A stretch of DNA of 64,000 bases from Macrostomum lignano (Eukaryota). The position numbers and the translations under genes were made by a program. The stretch lies in NCBI GenBank assembly GCA_002269645.1, contig NIVC01000765.1, positions 63,331 to 127,330 on the forward strand. The letters run 5' to 3'. The stretch's first letter is position 1. Every line of letters begins with the position of its first letter. Below the pieces are notes generated by a model, which saw nothing but the letters and a program-made list of their open reading frames with translations, ran no database searches and was not told the DNA's origin. Of this stretch, positions 611 through 55,828 are shown piece after piece.

Positions 611-12333
<11,723 letters not shown>

Positions 12334-12345
12334 AGTGAAATTCTG

Positions 12346-13232
12346 ACGATGAGATAGAATCCGATGAGATATAATCTGATGAGATATAATCTGATGAGAT
12401 AGAATCTGATGAGATAGAATCTGATGAGATATAATCGGATGAGATAGAATCTGATGAGATATAATCGGATGAGATAGAATCTGATGAGATAGAATCCGAT
12501 GAGATAGAATCTGATTAGATAGAATCCGATGAGATAGAATCTGATGAGATAGAATCTGATGAGATAGAATCTGATGAGATAGAATCCGATGAGATAGAAT
12601 CCGATGAGATAGAATCTGATGAGATAGAATCCGATGAGATAGAATCTGATTAGATAGAATCCGATGAGATAGAATCTGATGAGATAGAATCCGATGAGAT
12701 AGAATCTGATGAGATAGAATCCGATGAGATAGAATCTGATGAGATAGAATCTGATGAGATAGAATCTGATGAGATAGAATCCGATGAGATAGAATCCGAT
12801 GAGATAGAATCTGATGAGATAGAATCTGATGAGATAGAATCCGATGAGATAGAATCTGATGAGATAGAATCCGATGAGATAGAATCTGATGAGATAGAAT
12901 CTGATGAGATAGAATCCGATGAGATAGAATCTGATTAGATAGAATCCGATGAGATAGAATCTGATTAGATAGAATCCGATGAGATAGAATCTGATGAGAT
13001 AGAATCCGATGAGATAGAATCTGATTAGATAGAATCCGATGAGATAGAATCTGATGAGATAGAATCCGATGAGATAGAATCTGATGAGATAGAATCCGAT
13101 GAGATAGAATCTGATGAGATAGAATCTGATGAGATAGAATCTGATGAGATAGAATCCGATGAGATAGAATCCGATGAGATAGAATCTGATGAGATAGAAT
13201 CTGATGAGATAGAATCCGATGAGATAGAATCC
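12346..13232. repeat. 15-bp minisatellite (GATGAGATAGAATCY)
   Basis: Starts about 12 nt after the ACK stop codon. Confidence 0.97.
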
Positions 13233-13894
13233 GTTGACAGAATCTCACAGACTGATAAATATGTAAGGATTATATGTGTGAAATATGTAATAGCGTTAGA
13301 TATGCTTTTATTTCTCTCGCCCGCATTTGCTGATCAAAAATAGATTTGCAACTCTGCTTTCACAAGCGCCTATGTTCTTGCAATTGCGTGCGTGTGGGGT
13401 GGCGGTGCGTTCTCCAGCTTGCTAGCTGTCGTGGAGGACAAACTTTTACTCGTTATATTGTTGTCCGTTGGTTAATTATCAAACGGCATTTGTTGCATAT
13501 ATTACTACTACTACTTGGCTATTATCAGTAGTCTGCATGAACGATGCAAGTGTAAAATGATAATTGCATGAAATTTTGCAACCCCCGCTATACAAAATGC
13601 TGCTTTTATTACCTTCGTATTGAAACCTGTTTTTGCCTGGTGTTAAATGGGTCAGTCATTATCAACTATATGATATCTATTACTTAATTGCTACGATTGT
13701 GCTTCTAATGACCAGATATCCAGATTAATTGCCAGAATACGCACCTGCTATGACCTAAATGGTAAAATGGTAAAAAATGTTAAATGGTAAAATTAATAAA
13801 CTGTGTAACGGAGTGGACCAGACTAAACTTTCCCATTCTCCACACTGAATACGGCTTTTTAACACTGCTGTTTCGTGCATTTTTTCGTGCATCT

Positions 13895-15262
13895 TCCCAA
13901 CCCAGAAGAATCGTCCCCCCCCCCAACCCAGAAGAATCGCCCCCCCCCCAACCCATGAGAATCGCCCCCCCCCAACCCAGAAGAATTGCCCCCCACCCAA
14001 CCCATGAGAATCACCCCCAACCCAGAAGAATTGCCCCCACCCAACCCATGAGAATCGCCCCCCCCAACCCATGAGAATCGCCCCCCAACCCAGAAGAATT
14101 GCCCCCCACCCAACCCATGAGAATCGCCCCCCCCCCAACCCAGAAGAATTGCCCCCCACCCAACCCATGAGAATCGCCCCCCCCCAACCCATGAGAATCG
14201 CCCCCCCCAACCCAGAAGAATTGCCCCCCACCCAACCCATGAGAATCGCCCCCCCCAACCCAGAAGAATTGCCCCCCACCCAACCCATGAGAATCGCCCC
14301 CCCCCCAACCCAGAAGAATTGCCCCCACCCAACCCATGAGAATCGCCCCCCCCAACCCAGAAGAATTGCCCCCCACCCAACCCATGAGAATCGCCCCCCC
14401 CAACCCAGAAGAATTGCCCCCCACCCAACCCATGAGAATCGCCTCCAACCCAGGAGAATCGCCCCCAACCCCAACCCAGGAGAATCGCCCCCAACCCCAA
14501 CCCAGGAGAATCGCCCCCAACCCCAACCCAGGAGAATCGCCCCCAACCCAGGAAAATCGCCTTCAACCCAGGAAAATCGCCTTCAACCCAGGAAAATCGC
14601 CTTCAACCCTGGAGAATCGCCCCCAACCCCAACCCAGGAGAATCGCCCCCCCCCCAACCCCAACCCAGAAGAATCGCTCCCAAGCCAGGAGAATTGCCTT
14701 CAACCCAGGAGAATCGCCCCCAACCCAGGAGAATCGCCCCCCCCCAACCCCAACCCAGAAGAATCGCTCCCAAGCCAGGAGAATCGACCCAAGCCAGGAG
14801 AATCGCTCCCAAGCCAGGAGAATCGCCCCCAACCCAGGAGAATCGCCCCAACCCAGGAGAATCGCCCCCAACCCCAACCCAGGAGAATCGCCCCCAACCC
14901 CAACCCAGAAGAATCGCTCCCAAGCCAGGAGAATCGCCCCAAGCCAGGAGAATCGCCTTCAACCCAGGAGAATCGCCCCCCAACCCCAACCCAGAAGAAT
15001 CGCTCCCAAGCCAGGAGAATCGCCCTCAAGCCAGGAGAATCGCCTTCAACCCAGGAGAATCGCCCCCCAACCCAAACCCAGAAGAATCGCTCCCAAGCCA
15101 GGAGAATCGCCTTCAACCCAGGAGAATCGCCCCCCCAACCCAGGAGAATCGCCCCCAACCCCAACCCAGAAGAATCGCTCCCAACCCAGAAGAATCGCAC
15201 CCAAGCCAGGAGAATCGCCCCCAAGCCAGGAGAATTGCCCCGAGAATCGCCCCCAACCCAGA
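13895..15262. repeat. C-rich ~18-22-bp minisatellite (CCCCAACCCAGRAGAATCG)
   Basis: Immediately upstream of NTMT1. Confidence 0.95.
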
Positions 15263-15315
15263 ATTAATAATCTCCGCAGCCCATAAAATGGCGCCCACCC
15301 CATCGCAGCCCGAGC

Positions 15316-18300
15316 ATGACAACCGACTTAGCCAACAAGCCGGTCCAATTAAACGGCACTTCAAAAGACGCCGCTGATAAAACATCAAAGGATGCCGCCG
15401 CTGTCCCAGAAAATAAAGCTAATAATTGCGATGAGGCGCAGCAGCAGGAGGCTGAGTTCTACACTGATGCGGAGCGCTACTGGGCCACCGTGGAGGCCAC
15501 CGAGGCTGGCATGATGGGCGGCAACGACAGCCTCGATGAGATCGAAATCTCTTCATCACGGATGTTCCTGACCAGAGCTGCCGAGCTGGCCGGGCTGAGG
15601 CAGCTCAACCGGGCTCTGGATTGCGGCTCCGGCATCGGCCGGGTTACCAAGAAGCTCCTGCTGCCGATGTTTGCCACGGTTGACATGGCCGAGGTGACGA
15701 GCCACTTCCTGGCCAAGTCCAGGGAGTACATTGGGGAGCCAGATGCCTCCCGGGTGGGGCGACAGTTCTACTGCGGCCTGCAGGTGAATGGGATGGCCGG
15801 GTTTTGATGGGAAGATTTGGGATTTTTTATGATTTGGGATTCTTGATGAGGAAGATTTGGGATTTTTTATGGGAAGATTTGGGATTTTTGATGGCGAATA
15901 TTTGGGATTTTTGATGGCGAAGATTTGGGATTTTTATGGGTAAAGATTTTTATGGGGATGGTTTGGGATTTTTTTTGGGAAAGATGTGGGATTTTTTGGC
16001 GAAGATTTGGGATTTATTATGGCGAAGATTTGGGATTTTTGATGGGGAAGATTTGGGATTTTTATGGGGATGGTTTGGGATTTTTTATGGGGAAGATTTG
16101 GGATTTTTGGCGAAGATTTGGGATTTATTATGGCGAAGATTCGGGATTTTTATGGGGATGATTTGGGTCAGTGAGCCGCTCAGTGAGAACCAGCATGCCT
16201 TTCGGGCAGGCAGGTCCACGGAGAGCGCGCTTCACGTTCTGGTTGACATGCTGGAGAAAGCCGTTCTTGGTAATGGCTACGCTCTCGCTGTCTTCCTCGA
16301 CATTGTTGGAGCCTTCGATAATGTCCTCTTTGAGGCCTTTGACAGAGCTCTACGTGCTAGAGGAACCCACTCGCACCTCACCCGGTGGATCATGTATATG
16401 ATCAGCCACCGTACTGCCACCGCACACCTGTTGGGCCACCAACGGACGGTAACCGTCTGCAAAGGCAGCCCCCAGGGCGGTGTCCTCTCTCCAGTTCTCT
16501 GGAACATGGTCATCGATGAGCTCCTCCAGGACAGCCATCTTGACCCCATCCTCAAGGTCGGTTACGCCGATGATGTCACAGCCGTGGCATCCGGACCGTC
16601 ACCTGAAACCCTTAGAGATCTTTTGCAAAACTTCATTCGCTCTGCTGAACGTTGGGCGGACAGGTGCGGCCTCAGGCTCTCCGAGACCAAAACTGTCGCG
16701 ATCATGTTCACCAGCAGGGTAAACTGGCGTATTCGCCCACTAAAGCTTTACGGGGTGGAAATTCCATCCTGCAAGCAAACCAAGTGTCTCGGCGTTACGC
16801 TGGACCACCGGCTGAGCTGGTCCACCCACGTCCAGGCCAAAACCAAAAAAGCCCTCGCGATTCTTGCGCAGCTGCGCAGAGCCGTCGGCACCACCTGGGG
16901 CCTCACCCCAAAGCGTCTCTGGTGGATCTATACCGCAATGGTCCGACCGGCCGTTACATACGCCGGCCTGGTCTGGACCAGCGCCTTGCAGATTAAAACC
17001 TGCCACGAAGCCCTCAAAAAGGTGCAGGGACGTGCGTGCCGCATGATCCTGAATGCCCCGCTCTCTGCTCCCTTTGACGGCCTCAACGCCTTTCTCTGCC
17101 TCCCGCCTCTGGACATCTTTGTCCGTCGCGAGGCTGCTAAAACCACCCGCCGGCTCATCGAGGCTGGTGTTAGCTTCAAGCCACAAAGAGCGATGGCGAA
17201 GCGCAAGCTCCTGCCGCACTCTGACCTGTGCCTTAAAGTTCTGGAGGAGAGTGGGAGTGCGGCTGTCCTTTCGGACGCTGAACCGCGCTCCCTCAACCTC
17301 TACCAACGCTTCAAGGTCACGATCCCCTCCAGGGAGAACGCCAACGACAGCTGGGCCCCTCAGGAGGTTCACTGCTTCACTGACGGATCCTCCAAAGACG
17401 GTTTATCCGGCTTTGGAGTCTGCATCCTTATCAACGGCCGCGTGATTGCTACTCACGCCCAACACACTGGCAGACTCTCCAGCGTCTTCCAGAATGAAGT
17501 CCTTGCCATCAGCTCCTGTGCAGCTGAGCTCCACCGCAAGGACTTCAAGGACAGAAGAATCTTCTTCCACTCTGACAGCCAGGCCGCTTTACAGGCCCTG
17601 TGTCACACCACTACGAACTCCCGAACAGTCCGCGACTGTATCGGGCAGCTCAACAAGCTGGCTCGGAGGAACACCGTCCGGCTCACGTGGATCCCAGGAC
17701 ACGCCGGCTTCAAAGGTAACGAGCTCGCCGACTCCCTCGCTAAGGCGGGCTGTTCCGGCTCGCCCCTTGGCCCCGTGCCCCTGGCCCCCATCCCCGCCAC
17801 AGTCATTAATCGTCAGATTAACGACTGGGCGGACATCCTGCACTTGCGCAGATGGGATGGTATCTCCAACTGCCGCCAATCTCGTGCGGCAGTGCCCAAT
17901 CCGTCCCTCAAGCTGCGGAGAATCCTTTTGAATCAAAATCGAAAAGATATCCGCGCTCTCACTATGACCTTCACAGGTCACGGTTGCTTTGCCAGGCACT
18001 GCTTCCTCCGATGTGTTCGCCGGAGTGAACTCTGCCCCTTCTGCAGCCTCGAGAATGAAGATGCCATGCACTTCGTCTGCTACTGCCCGGCCTTCAACCG
18101 AGACCGGCTCAACCACCTCGGGCCCAACCCGTCCCTGGACGACGTTTGCCGGCCCGAGAACATCCCACGGCTCATCCGGTTCCTCCGGGCCACCAAGCGA
18201 GCCTCCGTCTTCCCCACCGAAGACAACGCTGCAGACAGGACCGGCAGACCTCCCTGACCGGCCCCGCGCCCTAGCCTATGCGGGTCTTTCAGGGATTAGC

Positions 18301-19775
18301 GGAATGGGCGACGCTCGCCTCCCCGCTGCGTCTTCGGACCGCCCTGCAGCTAAGTCAAGTAAGTAAGTCAAGGGGATGATTTGGGATTTTTTATGGGGAA
18401 GATTTGGGATTTTTTATGGGGAAGATTTGAGATTTTTGATGGCGAAGATTTGGGATTTTTGATGGCGAATATTTGGGATTTTTTATGGGGAATATTTGGG
18501 ATTTTTTATGGGGAATATTTAGGGTTTTTGATGGCGAAGATTTGGGATTTTTGATGGCGAAGATTTGGGATTTTTTATGGGGAATATTTGGAATTTTTTA
18601 TGGGGAATATTTGGGATTTTTGATGGCGAAGATTTGGGATTATGATGAGGAAGATTTGGGATTTTTGATGGGGAATATTTGGGATTTTTTATGGGGAATA
18701 TTTGGGATTTTTTATGGGGAATATTTGGGATTTTTTATGGGGAATATTTGGGATTTTTTATGGGGAATATTTGGGATTTTTGATGGCGAAGATTTGGGAT
18801 TTTTGATGGCGAAGATTTGGGATTTTTTATGGGGAATATTTGGGATTTTTGATGGCGAAGATTTGGGATTATGATGAGGAAGATTTGGGATTTTTGATGG
18901 GGAAGATTTGGGATTTTTGATGGGGAATATTTGATTTGTTTATGTCGAGGATTTGGGATTTTTATGAGATTTTTTAGATTTTTTGATAGTGGAGATTAAA
19001 GATTTTTCCATAAGGAAAATTTGGGATTTTTTATGGAAATATTTGGGATTTTTTATGGAAATATTTGGGATTTTTATATCCTGGCAAATTAGAAATGTTT
19101 CGATGGAGATGATTTGAGATTTTTGATTGCGAGATTATAAAATTTTTGTTGAGAAGATTTTCGGTTTATGTACGAGTGAGTAAAAGATTGAACTCGTCGA
19201 TGGGAAGTAAGATCGTGGGATATTTGGTGGAATTTCTAAAGAGCGGCTATTAGAAACTTTGATGATGGTTGAAGGTTAGGTTTGAATATACATATATCAA
19301 CCAGTCACTTGATAATTTCGAAGATTTCCTAATTTATAAACGCAAAATTATTTTATTGCTACTCTTAGTAGAGTAAATTGAAAATGCATTGAACGAAATA
19401 AATTAAACTCTATTAATTAATTACCCGCAGGACCTGACATTCCCAGCCGAGACCCGCTACGACCTGGTCTGGGTCCAGTGGGTCATCGGCCATCTGCGCG
19501 ACGCTCATCTGGTGGACTTTCTGCGCCGAGCCGCCGCCTCGCTCAGCCCCTGCGGCATGATCGGCGTCAAGGACAATGTCATCACCTCCCGGGACGACTC
19601 CGAGTACGACTTTGACGAGCAGGACAGCAGCGTCTGCCGGCCGCGGCGCTCCCTGCTGAACCTGTTCAACCAGGCCGGCCTGATCGTCCTGCTTGAGGAG
19701 ACTCAGGAGGGCTTCCCGGATGCCCTGTACCCGGTGCTGTCCTTCGCTCTGGTGCCCAAAGGCCGCTGCGTTTGA
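15316..19775 (+). CDS. NTMT1: Alpha N-terminal protein methyltransferase 1 (NRMT/Tae1 family), 2 exons
   Basis: Exon 1 15316-15783 (FY...YW, GMMGG, ALDCGSGIGRVTKKLLLP, CGLQ). Exon 2 19431-19775 (YDLVWVQWVIGHL, KDN, DEQDSSVCR, SFAL). Phase-0 GT-AG intron 15784-19430. Confidence 0.95.
15805..19075. repeat. ~23-bp minisatellite (GAAGATTTGGGATTTTTTATGGG) split by the LINE at 16168-18371
   Basis: Same unit on both sides of the insertion. Confidence 0.93.
16168..18371 (+). mobile_element. 5'-truncated non-LTR retrotransposon (RT + RNase H + C-terminal Cys/His knuckle; LOA/Lian-like, I group)
   Basis: Uninterrupted frame to the stop at 18257 with GSPQGGVLSP, YADD, FTDGS, WIPGHAGFKGNELAD and CPFC..H..C. 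3' end GCTAAGTCAAGTAAGTAAGTCAA. 14-bp TSD GGGGATGATTTGGG at 16154-16167 and 18372-18385. Clade call rests on resemblance only. Confidence 0.92.
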
Positions 19776-19777
19776 CA

Positions 19778-19950
19778 CTTTGAGTGTCAGACTGTTTGAG
19801 TGTCAGACTGTTTGAGTGTCAGACTGTTTGAGTGTCAGACTGTTTGAGTGTCAGACTGAGTGTCAGACTACATTTGATATTGTCAGGCTGTTTTTTGAGT
19901 GTCACACTGTTGAGTGTCAGACGACTGTTTGAGCTTCAGACTGCCTGAGT
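19778..19950. repeat. 16-bp repeat (TTTGAGTGTCAGACTG) directly after the NTMT1 stop
   Basis: About 5 clean copies, then decayed. Confidence 0.85.
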
Positions 19951-20324
19951 GTCTGTCTGTCTGTCTGTCTTTATCTATCCCTGTTTGTCTGTTCTATTTT
20001 TTGTTCTCCTAAATATACTCGTATAAATGCGCTGCCTGTTACAAGCTCATCTTGTTCCTTGATTGCTTACCTTAATGTAAGTTTTTATGTAATGCATTTC
20101 GTTCTGTTTGCGCTGTCGTTTTAGCGCTGAAGGCAGTGACTTTGTTTACGCAACTTCCTCTCTTAGTTTTTGTTTGTTACTTCTTTCTGATCTCTGTAAC
20201 GTATTTATCAGAGGAGCCCATAAATTATTAAAGAATTCCCTATTATAACTTGCCGGAAGCCTTCATGCAGTAACAACCTCTTTAAGGATCGCCACCCACT
20301 AATCACAAACCATTCCAAAACTAC

Positions 20325-20745
20325 AAACCAATCAGAAACCATCCTATAAACCGCCAACCAATCAGAAACCATTTAAAAATCGCCAACCAATCAGAAACCA
20401 TTTAAAAATCGCCAACCAATCAGAAACCATCCTATAAACCGCCGACCAATCAGAAACCATTCTATAAACCGCCAACTAATCAGAAACCATCCTATAAACC
20501 GCCAGCCAATCAGAAACCATCCTATAAACCGCCAACCAATCAGAAACCATCCTATAAACCGCCAACCAATCAGAAACCATCTTAAAAATCGCCAACCAAT
20601 CAGAAGCCGTCCTATGAACCGCCAACCAATCAGAAACCGTCCTATGAAGCGCCAACCAATTAGAAACCGTCAACAAATCAAAAACCGTCCTGAGAAGCGC
20701 CAAACAATCAGAAAACTCCCTTTAGACCGCCAACCAATCAAAAAC
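20325..20745. repeat. 30-bp minisatellite (CCAACCAATCAGAAACCATCCTATAAACCG)
   Basis: Upstream of the PCS-like gene; each unit carries CCAAT and TATAAA-like words. Confidence 0.92.
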
Positions 20746-20797
20746 AATCTAAAATTTGTCATCCAATTGGCAGCCACTTGAGAAAATCTCTCATTTC

Positions 20798-23081
20798 ATG
20801 TCATCCGACCGCTTGCTGGTGACCTTTCTGGACAGCGACGAAGGCCGACGCCGCCTCTTGGAAGTGTCGCCAATTCGTCCTGCCACGGTTGAAGGATTCT
20901 GCAAGAAGCTGCGCTGCGCCAGCTGCGGCATGGCCTCGATTTCGCTGGTGATGCGGGCGCAGACTGGGGATCAGGTGACCTATGCCGAAGACTTCATCTA
21001 CGACAGGTTTGTTTGTACGAAAAGTGCAGATAACCGGAACTAATTAAACTGTAGATAACCAGAACTAATCAAACCGTAGATAACCGGAAGTATTGGTAAT
21101 CAAACTGCAGATAACCGGAAGTAATCAAACTGCAGATAACCGGAAGTAATAAAAATGTAGATAACCGGAAGTAATCAAACTGCAGATAACCGGAAGTAAT
21201 AAAAATGTAGATAACCGGAAGTAATAAAAATGTAGATAACCTGAAGTTATAAAAATGTAGATAACCGGAAGTAATCAAACTGTAGATTACCGGAAGTAAT
21301 AAAAAATTGAAGTAGTATGGGTTTTCTCGGGGTGGCCTGGTAGGTCTTTGAATCCCACCGCTGCCACCAGTGAAGTACAGGCTGTTTTCTTCCCGGTTTA
21401 GGCACTTAAGATTACCTTAAGTCTCGAGCCTCTTCAGAGGGAAGTTCTCTCAAATCTCAGTAGCGTAAGTAGTGCTGCCACCAGTTCCTTCAGGTCTTGG
21501 CCTTCGGTGAGGTGAGCTTCCCGTCGGAACGAAATAACGAAGTCAACGAACACAGCACCTAGTGCAGAATTGCAGTTCAACGTACTAGGCGTCTCGTCAG
21601 CAGCACCTGCCGGGCTTGGATGGCAGAGGGAGGGCTGAGTTAGTCTCTCGTAGGCTTGGGGCGCTTCAGTCGGGTCTCAGTCAGACCACTACGAACATAC
21701 TCAATGTATGCAGAGACTCAGACACTCAGGACGTGGTCTCGGGAAGAACAAGACTAGCACAGAACTAGACGGAACAAGACTCCTTGACGGAAACAAGGGG
21801 GAGAGGGCTCCTATTTATAGCCGGGAAACACCCACGCAGAAGACCTCGTGACTCGTTCTATTTTTAGAACTGACGTCACTCGAGAGTCTTGGGCAGGGTA
21901 GAAGCGTGCGGAAGACCTCGTGACTTGTTCTATTTTTAGAACTGACATCACTTGAGGTCCCCGGCCAGAGTACACGCGGCTGTGACTCAGTTGCTATTTT
22001 TAGCAACATGAGTCACTCCTCTCCTTAGAGAAGGGAGGGGTCCGAAAGCACGTGACTCACCCGGTAAACAGGGCCAACGAGTGCAGTAAACATGTTTACT
22101 GCACTTTAGGACTTGAAGAACGCAGAGTCTGTCATGTGACTTGCTCACATGACAGAGGAAAACGGGACGGGAACGAAACAGAGACAGCCCACAGCAGAGA
22201 AGCTAAGGGCTGAGAACAAAGACGCAAAAGGCCAGAACAGGCCAAGGGCAGCAGCAGACAGACGAAAGGGAGGGGCGGGAGGCTGACCAGCGGCAGACAG
22301 CAACCCAGGGCGAAGGCGAGGGAACAGCTGACAAGGGCGACGCCTAACCATAAACTAGCGGCTCACTACAAAATGTAGATAAGCGAAAGTAATAAAAATG
22401 TAGATAACCTGAAGTAATAAAAAAGCAGATAACCGGAAGTAATAAAAAATGTAGATAACCGGAAGTAATCAAACTGCAGATAACTGGAATTATTAAAAAT
22501 GTAGATAACCTGAAGTAATAAAAAAGCAGATAACCGGAAGTAATAAAAAATGTAGATAACCGGAAGTAATCAAACTGCAGATAACTGGAATTAATAAAAA
22601 TGTAGATAACCGGAAGTAATAAAAAAGTAGATAACCGGAAGTAATCAAACTGTAGATAACCGGAAGTAATCAAATCTCAATTCCCAGACTCTCCGACATC
22701 AAACCACTGGCTGATTTGGATCAGCGCGGCATGACAGCCGACGATGTGGCCGCCTGCCTGCTGCGTCTCGGCGCCGCCTCCTCGGTACGGCGTCCTGGCA
22801 GCGCCGACGAGCTCCGCGATCTGGCTCTGACTCGCCTGGCTCAAGAGTCATCGTCTATCATTGCCAATTTCCATCTGAAAAGCTTGGGCTTTCCCTCCGA
22901 ATGGGGTCACCTGTCCCCTGTGGCAGCCTACCATCGCGACTCAGACAGTCTGCTCATAATGGACAATGACCCCAAGCCTAACGACCCCTTCTGGGTCACC
23001 ATGCAGGACCTCTACGAATCGATGCGGCCAGCGGACCCGGAATCTGGACTGCCCAGAGGACTCATTTTGGCGGAGTTTTAA
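20798..23081 (+). CDS. Phytochelatin synthase-like papain-fold protein, catalytic domain only, 200 aa, 2 exons
   Basis: Exons 20798-21006 and 22688-23081 (phase 2, 603 nt). Motifs SCGMASISLVMRA (catalytic Cys), RGMT and GHLSPVAAYHRDSDSLLIMD (His, with Asp at +18, the spacing of AtPCS1 H162/D180). Also PFWV and DPESGLPRGLIL. Confidence 0.85.
21040..22672. repeat. ~23-bp minisatellite (TGTAGATAACCGGAAGTAATAAAAA) split by the solo LTR
   Basis: Present at 21040-21307 and 22371-22672. Confidence 0.9.
21308..22370 (-). mobile_element. Solo LTR (TG...CA), in the intron of the PCS-like gene
   Basis: Ends TGTAGTGAG.../...TACTTCA on the minus strand. 4-bp TSD AAAT at 21304-21307 and 22371-22374, interrupting a minisatellite. 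CTATAAATA box on the minus strand near 21812-21820. Confidence 0.85.
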
Positions 23082-23419
23082 CCAAAGTCTACCGATATGT
23101 TGTGTAGTTAATTTTATGAACGTTTTATGACTATTGTGCCTGTCTACATATTTCAATAGGAAGCCTTTTACTTGTCTTAAAGTATAATGCAGTCGAACTT
23201 ATACTTTGAAAAAATATAAAACGCACATTTTCTACTTTAAGTAGCTTCATGAATTTGTATATTAAGCGAATGTCGACATTACCGAAAAACAAACTGGCTT
23301 TTGTTTGATTGACAGCTCAGATTCCGAAATTTCTTCATTATCGACACAGATGAAAGCCAGAAGTGCTGACTGTATATGCGCCATGTGCTCATGGCGAGAT
23401 TTGAAACTGGTGATATAAT

Positions 23420-23950
23420 ATATGGGTGAGATTCGGAACCAATTATCTCATGTGTGAGATTTGGAACTAATTATCTCATCTCATGGGTGATATTCGGAAT
23501 CAATCATCTCATGGGTGATATTCGGAACCAAATCATCTCATAGGTGATATTCGGAACCAATCATCTCATCTCATGGGTGATATTCGGAACCAAATCATCT
23601 CATAGGTGATATTCGGAACCAATCATCTCATCTCATGGGTGATATTCGGAACCAAATCATCTCATAGGTGATATTCGGAACCAATCATCTCATGGGTGAG
23701 ATTCGGAACCAATTATCTCATCTCATGGGTGAGATTCGGAACCAATTATCTCATCTCATGGGTGATATTCGGAACCAAATCATCTCATAGGTGATATTCG
23801 GAACCAAATCATCTCATAGGTGATATTCGGAACCAAATCATCTCATAGGTGATATTCGGAACCAATCATCTCACCTCATACATGTAGGTGACATTCGGAA
23901 CTATATTAAATCATCTCATCACATAGGTGACATTCTGAAATAATTATCTC
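23420..23950. repeat. ~29-34-bp minisatellite (GGTGATATTCGGAACCAAATCATCTCATA)
   Basis: Direct inspection. Confidence 0.9.
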
Positions 23951-24162
23951 ATCTCTTGGAATTTCGTCCGTGGCAGTACTACAGTTGGATTGCGAACAGC
24001 TATAAATTGGATTTCAAAGTCCGTTCATCCTCTTGCTATTGGTGCCAACACCCGATTGGCTGATCGAACCCCGTTCCGGTGCGGAAACTTCAGACAAACT
24101 TCCCATCTCCGAGCTTCTTCTATAAGTCGGCAGTTCCCCAGCTATTCCGTTAAAATTCCGAA

Positions 24163-25350
24163 ATGTCGAAATCAAGCAAGTCGCTAAGTGCCAAGGCGAA
24201 GCAGCAGCAGCAGCTTCAGCAGGAGGACCGCGGCTCCACCTCCACGGGCACCGAGGATGACGAAGGAGAGGATGGCAATGAAGGTCGCCGTCAGAAGTCG
24301 GAGTCCCGCAAGCGGCTGCAGCGGTCGTTTTCGCTGGTTCCGGAGCGACTTGCCGTCGGCGGCAAAGGAGGTGGCGGCAGCGGCGGCGGGCTGTTCAGGA
24401 AGTCCGCCAGCCGGATGCAGCTGTGCGAGGCCGTCCTGCAGGTGCTCATCGTTGGCCTGGTGGTGGCAACCTTCCCGTTCTCGCTGCTGCTGTGCCTGAA
24501 GGTGGTGGCCCAGTACGAGCGGGCGGTGATCTTCCGTCTGGGCCGCATCCGCAGCTCCGAGGCCAGCGGGCCCGGCATGATCTTCCTGCTGCCCGGCATC
24601 GACTCCATGAAGCTGGTGGACCTGCGCACCATGACATTCGACGTGCCCACCCAGGAGGTGCTGACTAAAGACTCTGTGACCGTGGCGGTTGAGGCCGTGG
24701 TGTACTACAGGATCTTCGACCCGGTCATGTCGGTTGTCAACGTCGAGGACTGCAGCCGCTCCACGAAGCTGCTCGCCCAGACAACACTGCGCAACGTCCT
24801 TGGCACGGCCAGTCTCTACCAGCTGCTGGCCGGCCGGGACGAATCCACCCTGCTGATGCAGGAGACTCTGGACGCCGCCACCGACACATGGGGCGTCAAG
24901 GTGGAGCGAGTGGAGATCAAGGATGTCCGCCTGCCGACTCAGCTGCAGCGGGCGATGGCCGCCGAGGCGGAGGCGGCCCGCGAGGCCCGGGCGAAGGTGA
25001 TCGCGGCCGAGGGCGAGCAGAAGGCCAGCAAAGCGTTGAAGGCGGCCGCCATCGAGCTGTCCGAGTGCGGAGTCGCCCTGCAGCTGCGCTACCTGCAGAC
25101 TCTGTGCAGCATCTCGGCTGAGAAGAACTCAACAATCATCTTCCCGCTGCCCATCGAGATGCTGCAGATGTTCCAGACCGAGCAGCAGCAGCCGCCGCCG
25201 CAGTCCACCGATGATTCTGACGCCACGGCACCGACTTCCTGTGCCAGGCCGGTGATCACCACCAGCCGGAAGTCGACGACGCATCCGCAGACCCAGCAGC
25301 AGATGGGAGCTGCTTCCGGTGCGAGCAGCAGCTTGGAGTCCGGCTGCTGA
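24163..25350 (+). CDS. Stomatin / band 7 (SPFH) protein, mec-2-like, single exon
   Basis: Intact 395-aa ORF with hydrophobic hairpin (..VATFPFSLLLCLKVV), YERAVIFRLGR, DVPTQEVLTKDSVTV, and coiled coil AMAAEAEAAREARAKVIAAEGE. Confidence 0.93.
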   Translation: MSKSSKSLSAKAKQQQQLQQEDRGSTSTGTEDDEGEDGNEGRRQKSESRKRLQRSFSLVPERLAVGGKGGGGSGGGLFRKSASRMQLCEAVLQVLIVGLVVATFPFSLLLCLKVVAQYERAVIFRLGRIRSSEASGPGMIFLLPGIDSMKLVDLRTMTFDVPTQEVLTKDSVTVAVEAVVYYRIFDPVMSVVNVEDCSRSTKLLAQTTLRNVLGTASLYQLLAGRDESTLLMQETLDAATDTWGVKVERVEIKDVRLPTQLQRAMAAEAEAAREARAKVIAAEGEQKASKALKAAAIELSECGVALQLRYLQTLCSISAEKNSTIIFPLPIEMLQMFQTEQQQPPPQSTDDSDATAPTSCARPVITTSRKSTTHPQTQQQMGAASGASSSLESGC

Positions 25351-25494
25351 TTGAAGGCTTTGAAGTGGGCTGACTGGGCTGCTTGACGGCCGTAGCAACT
25401 ATGATGCAGACTTGCGGGTCCTGTTTGTGTTTTGAGCAAAATTTCACTGGGTCTGTGAGACGGTAGTTGTCACCCTCCTGTTAAACACGAGTGG

Positions 25495-26412
25495 CCCCTG
25501 TTAGACAGGAATGTCACCTGTTAGACAGGAATGTCACCTGTTAGACAGGAATGTCACCTGTTAGACAGGGATGTCACCTGTTAGACAGGAATGTCACCTG
25601 TTAGACAGGAGTGGCACCTGTTAGACAGGAATGTCACCTGTTAGACAGGAATGTCACCTGTTAGACAGGAATGTCACCTGTTAGACAGGAATGTCACCTG
25701 TTAGACAGGGATGTCACCTGTTAGACAGGAATGTCACCTGTTAGACAGGAATGTCACCTGTTAGACAGGAATGTCACCTGTTAGACAGGAATGTCACCTG
25801 TTAGACAGGAATGTCACCTGTTAGACAGGAATGTCACCTGTTAGACAGGAATGTCACCTGTTAGACAGGGATGTCACCTGTTAGACAGGAATGTCACCTG
25901 TTAGACAGGAATGTCACCTGTTAGACAGGAATGTCACCTGTTAGACAGGGATGTCACCTGTTAGACAGGAATGTCACCTGTTAGACAGGAGTGGCACCTG
26001 TTAGATAGGATTGCACCACCTGTTAGACCGGATGGCACCTGTTAGATAGGATTGCACCACCTGTTAGACCGGATGGCACCTGTTAGATAGGATTGTGCCA
26101 CCTGTTAGACAGGAGTGGCACCTGTTAGATAGGGGTGGCACCTGTTAGACAAGAGTGAAACCTGTTAGACAGGGGTGGCACCTGTTAGACAGGGGTAGCA
26201 CCTGTTAGAGAGGAATGTCACCTGTTGGACAAGATTGGAACCTGTTACACAGGGGTGACACCTGTTAGACAGGGGTAGCACCTGTTAGACAGGATTGTGG
26301 CACCTGTTAGACAGGAATGTCACCTGTTGGACAAGATTGGAACCTGTTAGACAGGGGTGGCACCTGTTAGACAGGGGTGACACCCGTTAGACAGGGGTAG
26401 CACTGGTTACAC
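25495..26412. repeat. 20-bp minisatellite (CACCTGTTAGACAGGAATGT)
   Basis: Homogeneous to about 25990, diverged afterwards. Confidence 0.95.
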
Positions 26413-26749
26413 AGGTTTCTTTCTTAATTCTCATATGCAACTGCGCTCTAATAATAATCTATATTTATAGTAAAAGGAAATATAATGAACCGCTTGGCAA
26501 TGCAAACTGTTTAAGATTGACATGTACTTTATTCAAATCCTTCAACCGTGCTTTTAGCTTGGTCACGAATTTCATATCGTTCACCTATTAATTAATCAAT
26601 CAATCAATCAACAATAATGGATTTCCACCACTCAGAGATCAGTTGCTGCTCGGCTGTCCCCCACCGTCTGCTTAAGAAGCAGGCAGGGAAAAAACTTTAA
26701 GATAAAATCTTGATTGAAATTTTTATAATCCGCGTCTGCTCTGACTGTC

Positions 26750-27790
26750 ACTCTCCCGCTCACTGTCACTCTCCCGCTCACTGTCACTCTCCCGCTCTCT
26801 GTCACTCTCCCGCTCACTGTCACTCTCCCGCTCACTGTCACTCTCCCGCTCACTGTCACTCTCCCGCTCTCTGTCACTCTCTACTCACTGTCACTCTCCC
26901 GCTCACTGTCACTCTCTACTCACTGTCACTCTCTACTCACTGTCACTCTCCCGCTCACTGTCACTCTCTACTCACTGTCACTCTCTACTCACTGTCACTC
27001 TCTACTTACTGTCACTCTCTACTCACTGTCACTCTCTACTTACTGTCACTCTCTACTCACTGTCACTCTCCCGCTCACTGTCACTCTCCCGCTCACTGTC
27101 ACTCTTCCGCTCACTGTCACTCTCCCGCTCACTGTCACTCTCCCGCTCACTGTCACTCTCCCGCTCTCTGTCACTCTCTACTCACTGTCACTCTCCCGCT
27201 CACTGTCACTCTCTACTTACTGTCACTCTCTACTCACTGTCACTCTCTACTTACTGTCACTCTCTACTCACTGTCACTCTCTACTCACTGTCACTCCACG
27301 CACTGTCACCCCACGCACTGTCACTCCACTCACTGTCACTCCACTCACTGTCACTCCACTCACTGTCACTCCACTCACTGTCACTCCACTCACTGTCACT
27401 CCACTCACTGTCACTCCACGCACTGTCACTCCACTCACTGTCACTCCACTCACTGTCACTCCACTCACTGTCACTCCACTCACTGTCACTCCACTCACTG
27501 TCACTCCACTCACTGTCACTCCACTCACTGTCACTCCACTCACTGTCACTCCACTCACTGTCACTCCACTCACTGTCACTCCACTCACTGTCACTCCACT
27601 CACTGTCACTCCACTCACTGTCACTCCACTCACTGTCACTCCACTCACTGTCACTCCACTCACTGTCACTCCACTCACTGTCACTCCACTCACTGTCACT
27701 CCACTCACTGTCACTCCACTCACTGTCACTCCACTCACTGTCACTCCACTCACTGTCACTCACTCACTGTCACTCTCTGTACTCACTATC
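26750..27790. repeat. 18-bp/15-bp minisatellite (CACTGTCACTCTCCCGCT to CACTGTCACTCCACT)
   Basis: Direct inspection. Confidence 0.95.
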
Positions 27791-28569
27791 ACTGCGCATT
27801 TTCCTCAACTCCCACAGGATCCCCCAGTCAACAAAAATCTGTCGCCTTGAGATTGGCGGGAGAAAAGGGGATTTTTACGATCGCCTCAATCCTCGATCGC
27901 CTCGATCAATTTTCCAGCTAGAGAGGAGAGGAGGCGTGAAAAGCGTTGAAAAAAGGCACTTGCTCTTTTTCTGTCTAAGTGGCGTTTTTTATTTCCTTCC
28001 ACCTCTGCTCACAGCTTCTCAGTCCGGCCACTCACAGCCCCTTAGAATTATTTATGACAACCTGCAACGAGGAGTTGGGAGGGGATGAGGCGCCCTGAGG
28101 CTGGTACGGCGCTGCAAGGCCAAGCCTGACATTTGCGGGCGGCCCGATGATGGAGGAACTTGAAGTCTGCGCAATCATATGGATGCTGGGGGCTGGATGC
28201 GTACACTTGAGTTAAGAGTTAATCTCTCAGGCTAATCTCACACTCCTGGCGATTGTGTGTGTGTGCTCTGACACAGCTCAAGTTAATGCCAGTCTCTGCA
28301 GCAGTACTGTGGATGGAGAGAAACAGTCAATTGAGTGACTATACTCAAACACTCACATACAGACTGGGATTGCTGATAAAGCTGATTATATAGGTAGTTA
28401 CAGTTCTGCTTGGGCTTGAGAAAATTCAACAAAATCGGCTGTAGTTATTTAACAACTCGATAAAATGTTCGATTTAAAGTAGTAGCTAAACCGATGGTCT
28501 TAATGTCTAACAGGAAAGTTAAAAATCGATTCTCTTTCTTAGAAAGCGGCAGTTAAAAATCGGGTTTCT

Positions 28570-28705
28570 TTCTTAAACACAAGTAATAAAAAACCTTGTC
28601 CCTTTCTTAGAAACTGGTGATTAAAACTTTGTCTCTTTCTTAGAAACTGGTGATTAAAACCTTGTCCCTTTCTTAGAAACTGGTGATTAAACTGGTGATT
28701 AAACA
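28570..28705. repeat. Short repeat (TTTCTTAGAAACTGGTGATTAAAAC)
   Basis: 3-4 copies. Confidence 0.7.
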
Positions 28706-29023
28706 GGTTAGTCCGATAATAAAACCTCGAATTTTTCTGTTCTACTTTTACTTTTTTATTCATTCAAACCGGATTTCATGCTGAAACTACAGCGTAAAGT
28801 TAAAGCAAAAATACATGGACATAATATTAAAGGAAACAAGTGGCATTTTCTATTATTATAATCTATCTATTATAATCTCAAATTGCGGTCTCTAAAGTTG
28901 TCAATAATTTCTGGTTTCTTTATTCAGATAAAATCTGGACAAAACTCAAAAAAAATCAGGTAGCACGAGATCCACAAAATCCGTCTCGATCAGTTTTTTT
29001 ATGACACCACGAGCAGATGTGCA

Positions 29024-29329
29024 ACCGACAGCTCAGCCGCAGCTACTGCGCGGCGCATCTGAAGACTGCGTACGGCTGTTCAGTCCAAGGACTGGGGGTC
29101 GCCACACACACCCTCAATTACCCCAGCTAATGCTGGCACCCATTTTACAGCTGGGTGAACTGAAGCAATGCAGTGAGTTAAGTGTTCTGCTAAAGGACAC
29201 AAATTGTTCCAGTGGGATCGGGAATCGAACCCCCGGCCTTTCAGTCGTGAGTCAGTCGCTCTAACCCGGGAGATTGTGCTTCTCTGGCCGGTTGTCGCTG
29301 TCGCATAAGCTCCACTAGGCTACAACCCC
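29024..29329 (-). mobile_element. tRNA-derived SINE with CORE-like domain, copy 1
   Basis: Minus strand: GGGTTGTAGCCTAGTGG..TTAGAGCG (A box, split by a ~45-bp insert), GGTTCGATTCC (B box), then ACACTTAACTCACTGCATTGCTTCAGTTCACCCAGCTGTAAAATGGG, which resembles the CORE/MIR core. Confidence 0.7.
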
Positions 29330-36200: not shown

Positions 36201-36680
36201 CAGCAAGAGACAGGGGCGCCCACCAACAGACAGGGGCGCCCACCAAGAGACAGGGGCGCCCACCAAGAGACAGGGGCGCCCAGCAAGAGACAGGGGCGCC
36301 CACCAAGAGACAGGGGCGCCCACCAAGAGACAGGGGCGCCCACCAAAGAGACAGGGAGCGCCCACCAAGAGACAGGGGCGCCCACCAAGAGACAGGGGCG
36401 CCCACCAAGAGACAGGGGTGCCCACCAAGAGACAGGGGCGCCCACCAAGAGACAGGGGCGCCCACCAAGAGACAGGGGCGCCCACCAAGAGACAGGGGCG
36501 CCCAGCAAGAGACAGGGGCGCCCAGCAAGAGACAGGGGCGCCCACCAAGAGACAGGGGCGCCCAGCAAGAGACAGGGGCGCCCACCAAGAGACAGGGGTG
36601 CCCACCAAGAGACAGGGGCGCCCACCAAGAGACAGGGGCGCCCACCAAGAGACAGGGGCGCCGACCACGAAAAGACAGGG
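33238..36680. repeat. 3.4-kb 20-bp GC-rich minisatellite (GGGCGCCCACCAAGAGACAG)
   Basis: Direct inspection. Confidence 0.98.
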
Positions 36681-55696: not shown

Positions 55697-55767
<71 letters not shown>

Positions 55768-55772
55768 TAAGC

Positions 55773-55807
<35 letters not shown>

Positions 55808-55828
55808 TAAGCAGACAGACAGGCAGGC

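What the first reader, a model, noticed from the sequence alone, without database searches (positions are those of the whole stretch)
20798..23081. Half-size, prokaryote-style phytochelatin synthase-like gene with a spliceosomal intron in an animal genome
Seen: a 200-aa protein consisting only of the catalytic domain, with the Cys-His-Asp triad intact and no signal peptide. Established: plant, fungal and most animal PCS enzymes have an extra C-terminal region and a W.WF.E...CC segment, whereas cyanobacterial NsPCS (Alr0975) is domain-only. From memory, LVTFLDSDEGRRRLL, YAEDFIY and IKPLADLDQRGMTADDV resemble NsPCS (LIGFNSNEGEKLL, FTQDNFF, RQGMTLDEL) more than the eukaryotic form. Inference: a domesticated horizontal transfer or a distinct animal PCS-like lineage, perhaps acting as a glutathione or GS-conjugate peptidase rather than a polymerase.
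Basis: partly seen in the sequence, partly recalled or inferred. Interest (0 to 1): 0.8.

Follow-up and report, generated by a model that had tools for sequence, protein, structure and literature searches.

The report
Short phytochelatin-synthase-like gene in a flatworm
A real, transcribed, three-copy gene of the flatworm Macrostomum lignano encodes only the catalytic domain of phytochelatin synthase; it lies outside the usual animal form of the enzyme and lacks the residues needed to build phytochelatins, so it more likely just cleaves glutathione-type peptides.

Summary
Exons 20798-21006 and 22688-23081 (GT-AG intron, phase 2) give a 200-aa protein. It hits Pfam Phytochelatin (E=7e-22). Its predicted structure matches Nostoc NsPCS over its full length (TM 0.89), and the Cys43/His144/Asp162 triad is intact.

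The window is Macrostomum lignano contig NIVC01000765.1. The gene is already annotated from transcripts (PAA77091.1, BOX15_Mlig005282g2). It has three intact homeologous copies and begins at an annotated spliced-leader trans-splice boundary.

It is not a truncated canonical animal PCS. A profile of long eukaryotic PCS fits worst (88 bits) and the bacterial type fits better (125 bits). A short, signal-less eukaryotic group fits best (145 bits); that group includes sea urchins, a crinoid, an acorn worm and marine protists. No relative exceeds about 40% identity, and the tree leaves the protein on an unresolved long branch, so horizontal versus vertical origin is open.

- The oxyanion-hole Gln is Lys37, unique among the 82 compared sequences.
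- The acceptor-site residues (NsPCS Arg173/Lys206/Tyr207) are Leu133/Pro167/Asn168.

The positions I recall as the gamma-Glu contacts (Asp186/Arg193) are kept.

Best reading: a cytosolic gamma-Glu-Cys peptidase acting on glutathione or its conjugates, not a polymerase; it may be a weak enzyme. Moderately interesting.

The parts
20798..20800 (+). Start codon as it stands in this assembly. It lies immediately 5' of the annotated mRNA/CDS start (20801), the 5' boundary of gene g2, which I infer to be a spliced-leader trans-splice site.
   Evidence: The GenBank CDS PAA77091.1 starts at SSDRLL, i.e. 20801. The M. lignano spliced leader ends in ...TTGCATG (PMC8629364), so the leader can supply the AUG in frame.
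20801..21006 (+). Exon 1 (residues 2-70 plus two bases of codon 71). It contains Lys37 (20906-20908), which replaces the oxyanion-hole Gln, and the nucleophile Cys43 (20924-20926).
21007..22687 (+). Spliceosomal intron, phase 2, GT...AG, 1681 nt. The two homeologs have an intron at the same site of only 381 and 331 nt.
21020..21304 (.). Left part of a 25-bp tandem array (AAAATGTAGATAACCGGAAGTAATA) that makes up the ancestral intron.
21307..22369 (.). Interspersed repeat of about 1.06 kb inserted into the intronic array in this homeolog only. A diverged copy lies at 51346-52280.
   Evidence: No tRNA gene was called in it.
22370..22674 (.). Right part of the 25-bp intronic tandem array.
22688..23081 (+). 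Exon 2 (the rest of codon 71 to residue 200, plus TAA). It contains His144 (22908-22910), Asp162 (22962-22964), the remodelled loop DPKPND (residues 164-169), Asp186 (23034-23036) and Arg193 (23055-23057).
15310..19775 (+). Upstream same-strand gene (Methyltransf_PK family). It is probably gene 1 of the same transcriptional unit, the PCS-like gene being 'g2'. This homeolog carries a LINE/RT insertion at 16168-18371.
   Evidence: Gene calls in L006, L007 and L008. Colinearity. The 1025-bp gap to the PCS-like gene is mostly tandem repeats. Operon criteria come from PMC8629364.

Best explanation
This is a genuine, transcribed Macrostomum lignano gene (BOX15_Mlig005282g2). It encodes a 200-aa protein with no signal peptide that consists only of the papain-fold catalytic domain of the phytochelatin synthase family (Pfam PF05023).

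The protein is a very divergent member of the non-canonical, domain-only part of the family. It resembles most closely a short eukaryotic group found in echinoderms, a hemichordate and marine protists.

Inferred mechanism: Cys43, activated by His144 and Asp162, attacks the Cys-Gly bond of glutathione or a glutathione S-conjugate. The substrate's gamma-Glu end is held by Asp186 and Arg193. Gly is released and a gamma-Glu-Cys thioester forms. The pocket that positions a second glutathione for transpeptidation in real phytochelatin synthases is gone: NsPCS Arg173/Lys206/Tyr207 are Leu133/Pro167/Asn168 here. There is also no Cys-rich metal-sensing C-terminal domain. The acyl-enzyme is therefore most likely resolved by water. 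On this reading the protein is a gamma-glutamylcysteine-releasing peptidase, not a Cd-activated polymerase.

The oxyanion-hole Gln is replaced by Lys37, which predicts altered or lower catalytic efficiency.

Shown: gene structure, fold, family membership, residue states, copy number, exclusion from canonical PCS. Inferred: substrate, hydrolytic outcome, cytosolic location. Origin (old vertical lineage or horizontal acquisition) is unresolved.
For: - Gene model and domain.
- Full-length structural match to NsPCS, including its acyl-enzyme form 2BU3, TM 0.89-0.90.
- Triad and Asp186/Arg193 are invariant across the 26-sequence alignment. In the 82-sequence set they are invariant or near-invariant across all groups.
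- Acceptor-site residues are Arg in 18/18 canonical and 30/30 bacterial-type sequences. They are Met or Leu in 23/26 short-group sequences and Leu133 here. Lys206/Tyr207 are likewise replaced.
- R152K and K185R abolish AtPCS1 activity (PMC3855540).
- Profile fit: short eukaryotic group 144.8 bits, bacterial type 125.3, group D 113.3, canonical 87.9.
- Labelled members of the short group: Saccoglossus, Strongylocentrotus, Antedon, Diadema and MMETSP protists.
- Host context: colinear homeologs with the same intron site, all ORFs intact. Exon GC is 0.59-0.60, like neighbouring exons.
- The annotation is transcript-derived, with gene boundaries set at trans-splice sites (PMC5730564).
Against: - Lys37 replaces the oxyanion-hole Gln. 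That position is Gln in every other sequence with a residue there, apart from three bacterial-type sequences with Glu. Q50N and Q50A essentially kill AtPCS1. The protein could therefore be a poor enzyme, use another substrate, or be non-catalytic.
- Membership of the short eukaryotic group is not resolved by the tree. Only 90/200 bootstrap replicates unite it with that group.
- It lacks that group's one-residue deletion and its WPxTE motif.
- The three copies differ too little for a selection test (2-4 substitutions).
- No orthologue from any other flatworm was found.
- The gamma-Glu-binding roles of Asp225/Arg232 are recalled from the NsPCS structure paper. I did not read them here.
- There are no biochemical data.
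Confidence: 0.6

Rival explanations
1. Lineage-specific horizontal transfer. A bacterial or microbial-eukaryote half-size PCS-like gene entered the Macrostomum lineage and was domesticated, gaining an intron, trans-splicing and triplication with the genome.
For: - No orthologue was found in any other flatworm or spiralian among 5.8 billion clusters or 1.84 billion representatives.
- The family's distribution in animals is patchy.
- The domain-coding sequence is intronless in the sea urchin, crinoid and acorn-worm relatives.
- The M. lignano intron position is not shared with them.
- In the NJ tree the nearest leaves are two orphan long branches. One of them, P0153, has a bacterial-looking membrane anchor (87/200 replicates).
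- The only solved homologue is cyanobacterial.
Against: - No candidate donor: the best non-Macrostomum identity is about 37%, and only one hit scores below 1e-30, which is M. lignano itself.
- The bacterial-type profile fits 20 bits worse than the short eukaryotic profile.
- All 30 bacterial-type sequences keep Arg173, and Lys/Arg206 and Tyr207 are near-invariant in them; this protein lacks all three.
- Exon composition is host-like.
- A long-branch artefact explains the orphan grouping equally well.
Confidence: 0.3
2. Secondarily truncated canonical metazoan PCS: the Schistosoma/C. elegans type that lost its C-terminal half.
For: Canonical PCS occurs in parasitic flatworms (PMC3101182 and PMC9220675). 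UniProt gives the protein the canonical enzyme name.
Against: - The canonical profile is the worst fit (87.9 against 144.8 bits).
- Pfam score is 78 bits, against 256-282 for canonical proteins.
- It lacks WKGPWRWF..CC, Arg152, Phe184, Lys185 and Tyr186, which are invariant or nearly so in 18 canonical sequences.
- It is sister to a canonical sequence in only 16/200 replicates.
Confidence: 0.03
3. Catalytically impaired relic or pseudoenzyme. The fold is kept, but loss of the oxyanion-hole Gln and of Gln157/Tyr55-type residues means it no longer turns over glutathione. It may bind a gamma-glutamyl ligand or be drifting towards loss.
For: - Lys37 in place of Gln is unique among the 82 compared sequences.
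- Q50N and Q50A inactivate AtPCS1.
- AtPCS1 Gln157 corresponds to Phe138 and Tyr55 to Ser42.
- It is the most divergent member by Pfam score.
- No conservation outside M. lignano can be shown.
Against: - Triad and gamma-Glu-contact positions are intact in all three homeologs, with no frameshift or stop.
- The gene is transcribed and processed, according to the transcript-based annotation with a trans-splice boundary.
- A lysine ammonium group could in principle stabilise an oxyanion.
- From memory, papain Gln19 mutants lose activity only partly.
Confidence: 0.2

Closest known systems
Nostoc sp. PCC 7120 Alr0975 (NsPCS), the 'primitive' half-size phytochelatin synthase (PDB 2BTW, 2BU3, 6TH5, 6THO)
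   Same: It is domain-only at about 200 residues and has the same papain-like fold (TM 0.89-0.90). The Cys-His-Asp triad matches, as do the Asp/Arg pair at NsPCS positions 225/232. It has no WKGPWRWF..CC segment and no C-terminal domain. NsPCS is described as mainly a glutathione hydrolase with weak PC2 synthesis (discussion quoted in PMC11314372).
   Different: Sequence identity is only about 24-25%. NsPCS has Gln64, Arg173, Gln178, Lys206 and Tyr207; this protein has Lys37, Leu133, Phe138, Pro167 and Asn168. NsPCS is made with an N-terminal leader, whereas this protein starts at the domain. The residue four before the catalytic Cys is Asn in NsPCS and Arg39 here.
Short eukaryotic PCS-like proteins of Ambulacraria and marine protists: Strongylocentrotus purpuratus XP_003730583.1 (219 aa), Saccoglossus kowalevskii LOC100368764/LOC100369208, Antedon mediterranea XP_071964499.1, Diadema XP_071476120.1, and MMETSP transcripts
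   Same: They are 200-250 aa with no signal peptide and no C-terminal domain. Their profile fits this protein best (144.8 bits). They have Met or Leu at the Arg173 position and have lost the R-Y/F-K-Y loop. The loop before the catalytic His is one residue longer. They sit in large animal scaffolds.
   Different: Identity is only 26-32%. They keep the oxyanion Gln and mostly Gln178. They carry a WPxTE motif with a one-residue deletion that this protein lacks. Their domain-coding sequence is intronless, whereas this gene has a mid-domain intron. Monophyly with this protein is unresolved. As far as I could find, none has been characterised.
Canonical eukaryotic phytochelatin synthase (AtPCS1, C. 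elegans PCS-1, Schistosoma mansoni PCS; EC 2.3.2.15)
   Same: It shares the Pfam family and the catalytic triad, and presumably the first acylation step on glutathione.
   Different: Canonical enzymes have a Cys-rich C-terminal domain and conserved N-domain cysteines. They have the Arg152/Lys185/Tyr186 acceptor cavity and Gln50. This protein has none of these, and the canonical profile is its worst fit.
Half-size PCS-like proteins of algae (diatoms, red algae, prasinophytes, extremophile Chlamydomonadales), 'group 1' of PMC11314372
   Same: They are a precedent for domain-only PCS homologues in eukaryotes. Horizontal transfer from bacteria has been proposed for some of them.
   Different: That work covers algae and cyanobacteria only. 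It defines groups by Asn or Asp/Glu near the catalytic Cys, and this protein has Arg there. I did not test whether the protist members of my short group coincide with their group 1.

Membership tests
Phytochelatin synthase family (Pfam PF05023) | Significant match to the family profile above the curated cut-off | tested here: met
   78.1 bits, E=7e-22, cut-off 24.9; residues 34-194 match model positions 41-209 of 210.
Phytochelatin synthase family (Pfam PF05023) | Papain-like fold superimposable on the solved family member | tested here: met
   The AlphaFold2 model (pLDDT 92.4) matches NsPCS chains with TM 0.88-0.90 and E about 3e-16. The next-best fold is staphopain at TM 0.52. This rests on a predicted structure, not a solved one.
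Phytochelatin synthase family (Pfam PF05023) | Cys-His-Asp catalytic triad | tested here: met
   Cys43, His144 and Asp162 occupy columns that are invariant or near-invariant in all groups.
Phytochelatin synthase family (Pfam PF05023) | Oxyanion-hole Gln six residues before the catalytic Cys (papain Gln19, NsPCS Gln64, AtPCS1 Gln50) | tested here: not met
   The residue is Lys37 in the window copy and in both homeologs. Among the other compared sequences that have a residue at this position, 74 have Gln and 3 have Glu. The role of the Gln is stated in PMC3855540.
Phytochelatin synthase family (Pfam PF05023) | Residues at the positions I recall as contacting the gamma-Glu moiety of the acyl group (NsPCS Asp225, Arg232) | tested here: met
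   Asp186 and Arg193 align with them; the Arg column is invariant and the Asp column near-invariant. Their role is from my memory of the NsPCS structure paper, which was not held in the library.
Canonical eukaryotic phytochelatin synthase (EC 2.3.2.15) | Cys-rich C-terminal domain | tested here: not met
   The stop codon lies at residue 200. The transcript-based annotation ends at the same place. tblastn with 27 C-terminal tails finds nothing in the window.
Canonical eukaryotic phytochelatin synthase (EC 2.3.2.15) | Second-substrate (acceptor) cavity Arg152/Lys185/Tyr186 (NsPCS Arg173/Lys206/Tyr207) | tested here: not met
   The residues here are Leu133, Pro167 and Asn168. Canonical sequences have Arg 18/18, Lys 18/18 and Tyr 16/18. 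R152K and K185R abolish activity.
Canonical eukaryotic phytochelatin synthase (EC 2.3.2.15) | Conserved N-domain cysteines in the WKGPWRWF..CC segment | tested here: not met
   The segment is present in P0023 and P0024 and absent here. The protein's cysteines are C35, C40, C43 and C93 only.
Canonical eukaryotic phytochelatin synthase (EC 2.3.2.15) | Metal-activated synthesis of (gamma-Glu-Cys)n-Gly | not testable with these tools
   This needs an enzyme assay.
Bacterial/cyanobacterial half-size PCS-like (NsPCS type) | Best profile fit and tree placement with bacterial-type sequences | tested here: not met
   The bacterial-type profile scores 125.3 bits against 144.8 for the short eukaryotic group. 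The protein is sister to a bacterial-type sequence in 11/200 replicates.
Bacterial/cyanobacterial half-size PCS-like (NsPCS type) | Retains Arg173 and the R-Y-K-Y loop; has an N-terminal leader or anchor | tested here: not met
   Arg173 is present in 30/30 bacterial-type sequences, and Tyr207 in 28/30. This protein has Leu133 and DPKPND. It has no hydrophobic N-terminus.
Short eukaryotic PCS-like group (Ambulacraria plus protists; my 'group A') | Best profile fit; hydrophobic residue at the Arg173 position; no leader; longer pre-His loop | tested here: met
   The profile scores 144.8 bits, the top score. The protein has Leu133, against Met19/Leu4 of 26 in the group.
Short eukaryotic PCS-like group (Ambulacraria plus protists; my 'group A') | Monophyly with the group; WPxTE motif with a one-residue deletion after the catalytic Asp | tested here: inconclusive
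   A clade of this protein with at least 80% of the group appears in 90/200 NJ bootstrap replicates. The motif and deletion are absent here, the loop being DNDPKPNDPFW with the 'long' spacing.

The most novel reading that the evidence does not exclude
The Macrostomum protein, and perhaps the whole short animal/protist group, is a functionally new offshoot of the phytochelatin-synthase fold. It would be a cytosolic cysteine peptidase or transferase with a rebuilt acceptor pocket and, in Macrostomum, a lysine oxyanion hole. It would act on a gamma-glutamyl thiol other than plain glutathione, or perform a reaction other than phytochelatin synthesis or Gly release. It would have reached animals by one or more horizontal transfers.
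Probability: 0.15. Interest if true: 0.7.

Novelty: new variant of a known kind. Interest (0 to 1): 0.45.

Why it matters
Animal phytochelatin synthases are discussed as metal-detoxification enzymes and, in parasitic flatworms, as drug targets. Database pipelines give this gene and its sea-urchin relative the full enzyme name.

The residue analysis here suggests that a whole set of short animal and protist homologues cannot carry out the polymerising step. Their presence should therefore not be read as evidence that an animal makes phytochelatins.

If the predicted hydrolase activity is real, these proteins would be a cytosolic route for removing Gly from glutathione or glutathione conjugates in animals. 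That route would be independent of gamma-glutamyl transpeptidase. M. lignano is transgenic- and RNAi-tractable, so the question can be tested.

The patchy distribution, intronless relatives and lack of a close donor also make this a reasonable but unproven case for studying gene transfer or extreme loss in animals.

Tried and rejected
- **Word-indexed homologue searches** with the protein, a 26-sequence profile and the nearest short homologue P0010. They returned few hits and almost no new taxon names, so they did not reveal other spiralian members.
- **Transcript evidence.** Support for the junction therefore comes only from the transcript-derived GenBank annotation and the homeologs.
- **dN/dS among the three homeologs.** There are only 2-4 substitutions per pair, which is uninformative.
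- **Shared intron positions with ambulacrarian genes.** Their domain-coding sequence is intronless, and the one Saccoglossus intron lies in an N-terminal extension. This gives no evidence either way.
- **NJ trees**. They do not resolve the position beyond exclusion from canonical PCS. No maximum-likelihood program was available.
- **C-terminal PCS domain** elsewhere in the window: none found.
- **Intronic insert as a tRNA-derived element.** ARAGORN calls no tRNA there; its class is left open.
- **Spliced-leader 3'-end matches** at other gene starts in the window: nothing convincing.
- **NCBIfam:** no hit.
- **A canonical full-length PCS in M. lignano.** I could not determine whether one exists; no tool gives access to the whole genome.
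- **NsPCS structure paper and the Rea 2004 review:** not held in the library.
Full report
**1. What is in the sequence**

On the + strand an ATG lies at 20798-20800. It opens a reading frame that runs to a CAG|GTTTGT donor at 21006/21007. The frame resumes after a TTCCCAG| acceptor at 22688 and ends at TAA, 23079-23081. The two exons (209 + 394 nt) give 603 nt in frame and a 200-aa protein.

Exon GC is 0.59-0.60 and intron GC is 0.45. Neighbouring host exons have GC 0.59-0.65. The intron is a 25-bp tandem array (21020-21304 and 22370-22674) split by an interspersed repeat of about 1.06 kb. A diverged copy of that repeat lies at 51346-52280.

**2. Family and fold**

- The protein matches Pfam PF05023 (Phytochelatin) at 78.1 bits, E=7e-22, well above the 24.9-bit cut-off.
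- By sequence, the only solved relatives are the Nostoc Alr0975/NsPCS entries, E about 1e-13, aligned over residues 12-197.
- An AlphaFold2 model built on a 26-sequence alignment is confident (pLDDT 92.4, pTM 0.91).
- The model superimposes on every NsPCS chain at TM 0.88-0.90, including the acyl-enzyme 2BU3. The next fold, staphopain, reaches only 0.52.

So 200 residues make a complete catalytic domain. Cys43, His144 and Asp162 sit on the catalytic triad.

**3. Whose gene it is, and whether it is real**

The protein is 99-100% identical to Macrostomum lignano database entries. Locus L008, from Mlig_3_7 contig NIVC01000765.1, is base-for-base identical to window 14801-29081. The gene is BOX15_Mlig005282g2 (PAA77091.1), listed as a 199-aa 'partial' hypothetical protein. 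UniProt calls the same protein glutathione gamma-glutamylcysteinyltransferase. The gene is therefore not new to databases.

Two further loci, L006 and L007, are colinear: methyltransferase, then the PCS-like gene, then stomatin. Both carry intact 200-codon copies with the same GT-AG intron site. Their introns are only 381 and 331 nt. This fits the hidden polyploidy of the species.

The Mlig_3_7 annotation is built from RNA-seq and de novo transcripts. Gene boundaries inside 'transcriptional units' are cut at experimentally mapped spliced-leader sites (PMC5730564). That gives indirect transcript support for the junction and for the gene's ends.

No PCS C-terminal domain exists anywhere in the window. 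The next gene, stomatin at 24163, is unrelated. One UniProt model (P0005) wrongly fuses the two.

**4. The 5' end**

GenBank starts the CDS at 20801, directly after the genomic ATG, and labels the gene g2. Given how the annotators cut genes out of transcriptional units, I infer that this boundary is a spliced-leader trans-splice site.

The M. lignano spliced leader ends in ...TTATTGCATG (PMC8629364). The leader's AUG joined to UCA UCC gives the same M-S-S-D start.

A trans-splice acceptor needs AG. The three Mlig_3_7 copies read TTTCATG or TTGCATG there. UniProt models read His-Phe-Gln-Ser-Ser, a Gln codon (CAA or CAG); if CAG, the genome would read TTTCCAG|TCA, a good acceptor. I believe those models come from the older assembly.

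Mlig_3_7 was polished with Pilon using RNA-seq reads. I therefore suspect that the genomic ATG is leader sequence written into the assembly. This is an inference and does not change the protein.

The upstream methyltransferase gene ends 1025 bp away. About 620 bp of that gap is tandem repeat. By the published criteria this would count as an operon.

**5. Relatives**

An exhaustive phmmer scan of 1.84 billion representatives gave 1602 hits. Only one scored below 1e-30, and it is M. lignano itself. Everything else is at most about 40% identical.

The hits fall into four sets:
- **Group B:** long canonical PCS, 330-800 aa, with WKGPWRWF..CC and Pfam scores of 256-282 bits.
- **Group C:** bacterial-type proteins, 230-270 aa, with N-terminal leaders. 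NsPCS falls among them.
- **Group D:** a small set that I presume to be bacterial.
- **Group A:** short proteins, 200-250 aa, with no leader.

Group A turned out to be eukaryotic. Labelled members are:
- two tandem genes in Saccoglossus kowalevskii;
- Strongylocentrotus purpuratus XP_003730583.1 on a 37-Mb chromosome;
- Antedon mediterranea and two Diadema species;
- MMETSP protist transcripts.

**6. Placement**

Profiles built from each set score the M. lignano protein as follows:

| Group | Bits |
|---|---|
| A, short eukaryotic | 144.8 |
| C, bacterial type | 125.3 |
| D | 113.3 |
| B, canonical | 87.9 |

In NJ trees the protein is a long branch near the split between groups A and C. It usually pairs with two other orphans, P0087 and P0153. 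In 200 bootstrap replicates its sister was:

| Sister | Replicates |
|---|---|
| orphan(s) only | 87 |
| group A only | 42 |
| group A plus orphans | 15 |
| canonical (B) | 16 |
| group D | 15 |
| bacterial type (C) | 11 |

A clade of this protein with at least 80% of group A appeared in 90 of 200 replicates.

The exact affiliation is unresolved.

Intron positions do not help. The ambulacrarian genes have a single-exon domain, and the one Saccoglossus intron lies in an N-terminal extension.

**7. Active-site anatomy**

This is the main new result. I mapped NsPCS and AtPCS1 residues onto an 82-sequence alignment.

| NsPCS / AtPCS1 residue | Role | State elsewhere | State in M. lignano |
|---|---|---|---|
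| Gln64 / Gln50 | oxyanion hole | Gln in every sequence with a residue here, except Glu in 3 bacterial-type | Lys37, in all three homeologs |
| Arg173 / Arg152 | acceptor cavity | Arg in 18/18 canonical and 30/30 bacterial; Met or Leu in 23/26 group A | Leu133 |
| Lys206 / Lys185 | acceptor cavity | conserved in canonical and bacterial types | Pro167 |
| Tyr207 / Tyr186 | acceptor cavity | conserved in canonical and bacterial types | Asn168 |
| Gln178 / Gln157 | cavity | mostly Gln | Phe138 |
| Tyr69 / Tyr55 | cavity | mostly aromatic in canonical and bacterial types | Ser42 |
| Asp225, Arg232 | gamma-Glu contacts (from memory) | Arg invariant, Asp near-invariant | Asp186, Arg193 |

The oxyanion-hole role of Gln64/Gln50 (papain Gln19) and the statement that Q50A and Q50N essentially abolish AtPCS1 activity come from PMC3855540. 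The same paper describes the acceptor-cavity residues as strictly conserved and reports that R152K and K185R destroy activity.

**8. Mechanistic reading**

Conserved elements are the nucleophile, the general base, the orienting Asp and the gamma-Glu anchor. Lost elements are the acceptor pocket, the conserved N-domain cysteines and the C-terminal metal-sensing domain.

This pattern fits an enzyme that still acylates on a gamma-Glu-Cys-X substrate and then deacylates to water. That would be glutathione or GS-conjugate Gly-releasing peptidase activity, the side activity known for PCS and dominant in NsPCS (discussion in PMC11314372).

The Lys-for-Gln change predicts altered kinetics. It leaves open a weak enzyme, a different substrate or a non-catalytic binder.

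The absence of a signal peptide suggests a cytosolic location. All of this section is inference from residues; nothing here tests activity.

**9. Origin**

Arguments for horizontal acquisition:
- No orthologue is seen in any other flatworm or spiralian in very large databases.
- The distribution in animals is patchy.
- The ambulacrarian relatives are intronless.

Arguments against a recent bacterial source:
- No donor is closer than about 37% identity.
- The bacterial profile fits worse than the eukaryotic short profile.
- All bacterial-type sequences keep residues that this protein has lost.
- Composition, the intron, trans-splicing and three homeologs all indicate long residence in the host.

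I leave the origin open, at roughly 0.3 for lineage-specific transfer.

**10. Comparison with what is known, and novelty**

Half-size PCS-like proteins are well known in bacteria. They have recently been catalogued in algae, with transfer proposed for some (PMC11314372). Animal PCS literature treats the canonical enzyme. A Saccoglossus BLAST hit is merely listed as another phylum with PCS (PMC3838358). I found no paper on short animal forms, on M. lignano PCS, or on the sea-urchin 'PCS 2'.

I rate this a new variant of a known kind. It belongs to a known family and a known domain-only architecture. However, it sits in an uncharacterised short eukaryotic branch with a rebuilt acceptor site, and it carries a unique oxyanion-hole substitution. 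Interest is moderate (0.45).

The practical message is that these genes should not be counted as evidence for phytochelatin synthesis in animals. The open questions are the real substrate and the origin.

Noticed in passing
window 20792-20800; L006 and L007 positions 5992-6000: The genomic ATG lies exactly where a spliced-leader acceptor AG is expected. The three Mlig_3_7 copies read TTTCATG or TTGCATG, the last 3 or 7 bases of the spliced leader. UniProt models of the same protein read a Gln codon here (HFQSS). Mlig_3_7 was Pilon-polished with RNA-seq, so leader sequence may have been written into the assembly at trans-splice sites.
   Followed up: partly
window 15310-23081: The PCS-like gene is 'g2' of a transcriptional unit. 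The same-strand Methyltransf_PK-family methyltransferase gene ends 1025 bp upstream, and most of that gap is tandem repeat. The arrangement is conserved in all three homeologous loci, so this is a likely two-gene operon resolved by trans-splicing.
   Followed up: partly
window 16168-18371: A LINE-type reverse-transcriptase/RNase H element (ORF 15936-18257) is inserted inside the methyltransferase gene in this homeolog. It is absent from the colinear locus L006.
   Followed up: partly
window 21307-22369 and 51346-52280: An interspersed repeat of about 1.06 kb with no long ORF is inserted in the PCS-like intron of this homeolog only. Both copies end in ...CTAGCGRCTCACTAC. It contains a stretch resembling a tRNA 3' end or primer-binding site (…CCCACCGCTGCCACCA) near 21355-21390. 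ARAGORN calls no tRNA there, and the element's class is undetermined.
   Followed up: partly
window 40375-41439 and 50080-51081: Two nearly identical ORFs that look fibrinogen-related by eye lie about 9.7 kb apart. One carries an extra internal repeat of a short Cys/His-rich segment. This looks like a recent local duplication.
   Followed up: no
window 5147-11534, 12067-13248, 13755-15290, 26710-27921, 33171-37238, 55500-56430: Very long minisatellite arrays fill a large part of the window. One of about 4 kb has GC 0.70 and AT skew 0.99 (33171-37238). They produce spurious ORFs of more than 1000 codons in several frames.
   Followed up: no
P0005, P0002, P0003, P0004 (UniProt M. lignano entries): Several UniProt models of this gene family are frameshifted or chimeric. 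P0005 fuses the PCS-like exon 1 to the downstream stomatin gene. P0002 and P0003 carry unrelated names (inositol-pentakisphosphate 2-kinase, EF-hand). These are likely artefacts of the earlier error-rich assembly.
   Followed up: partly
L005 8001-8621 and L009 1501-4044 (Saccoglossus kowalevskii GL010720.1): The acorn worm has two tandem short PCS-like genes about 6 kb apart. One is intronless. The other has a single intron in a 25-residue N-terminal extension that might be a targeting sequence.
   Followed up: partly
P0006, P0007, P0009, P0020, P0026, P0027 (metagenomic or transcriptomic hits): Some homologues carry two or three tandem PCS-like domains in one protein. In P0006 and P0027 the first domain has lost the catalytic Asp, yet its post-Asp loop (APPKPQPLW) resembles the M. 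lignano DPKPNDPFW.
   Followed up: no
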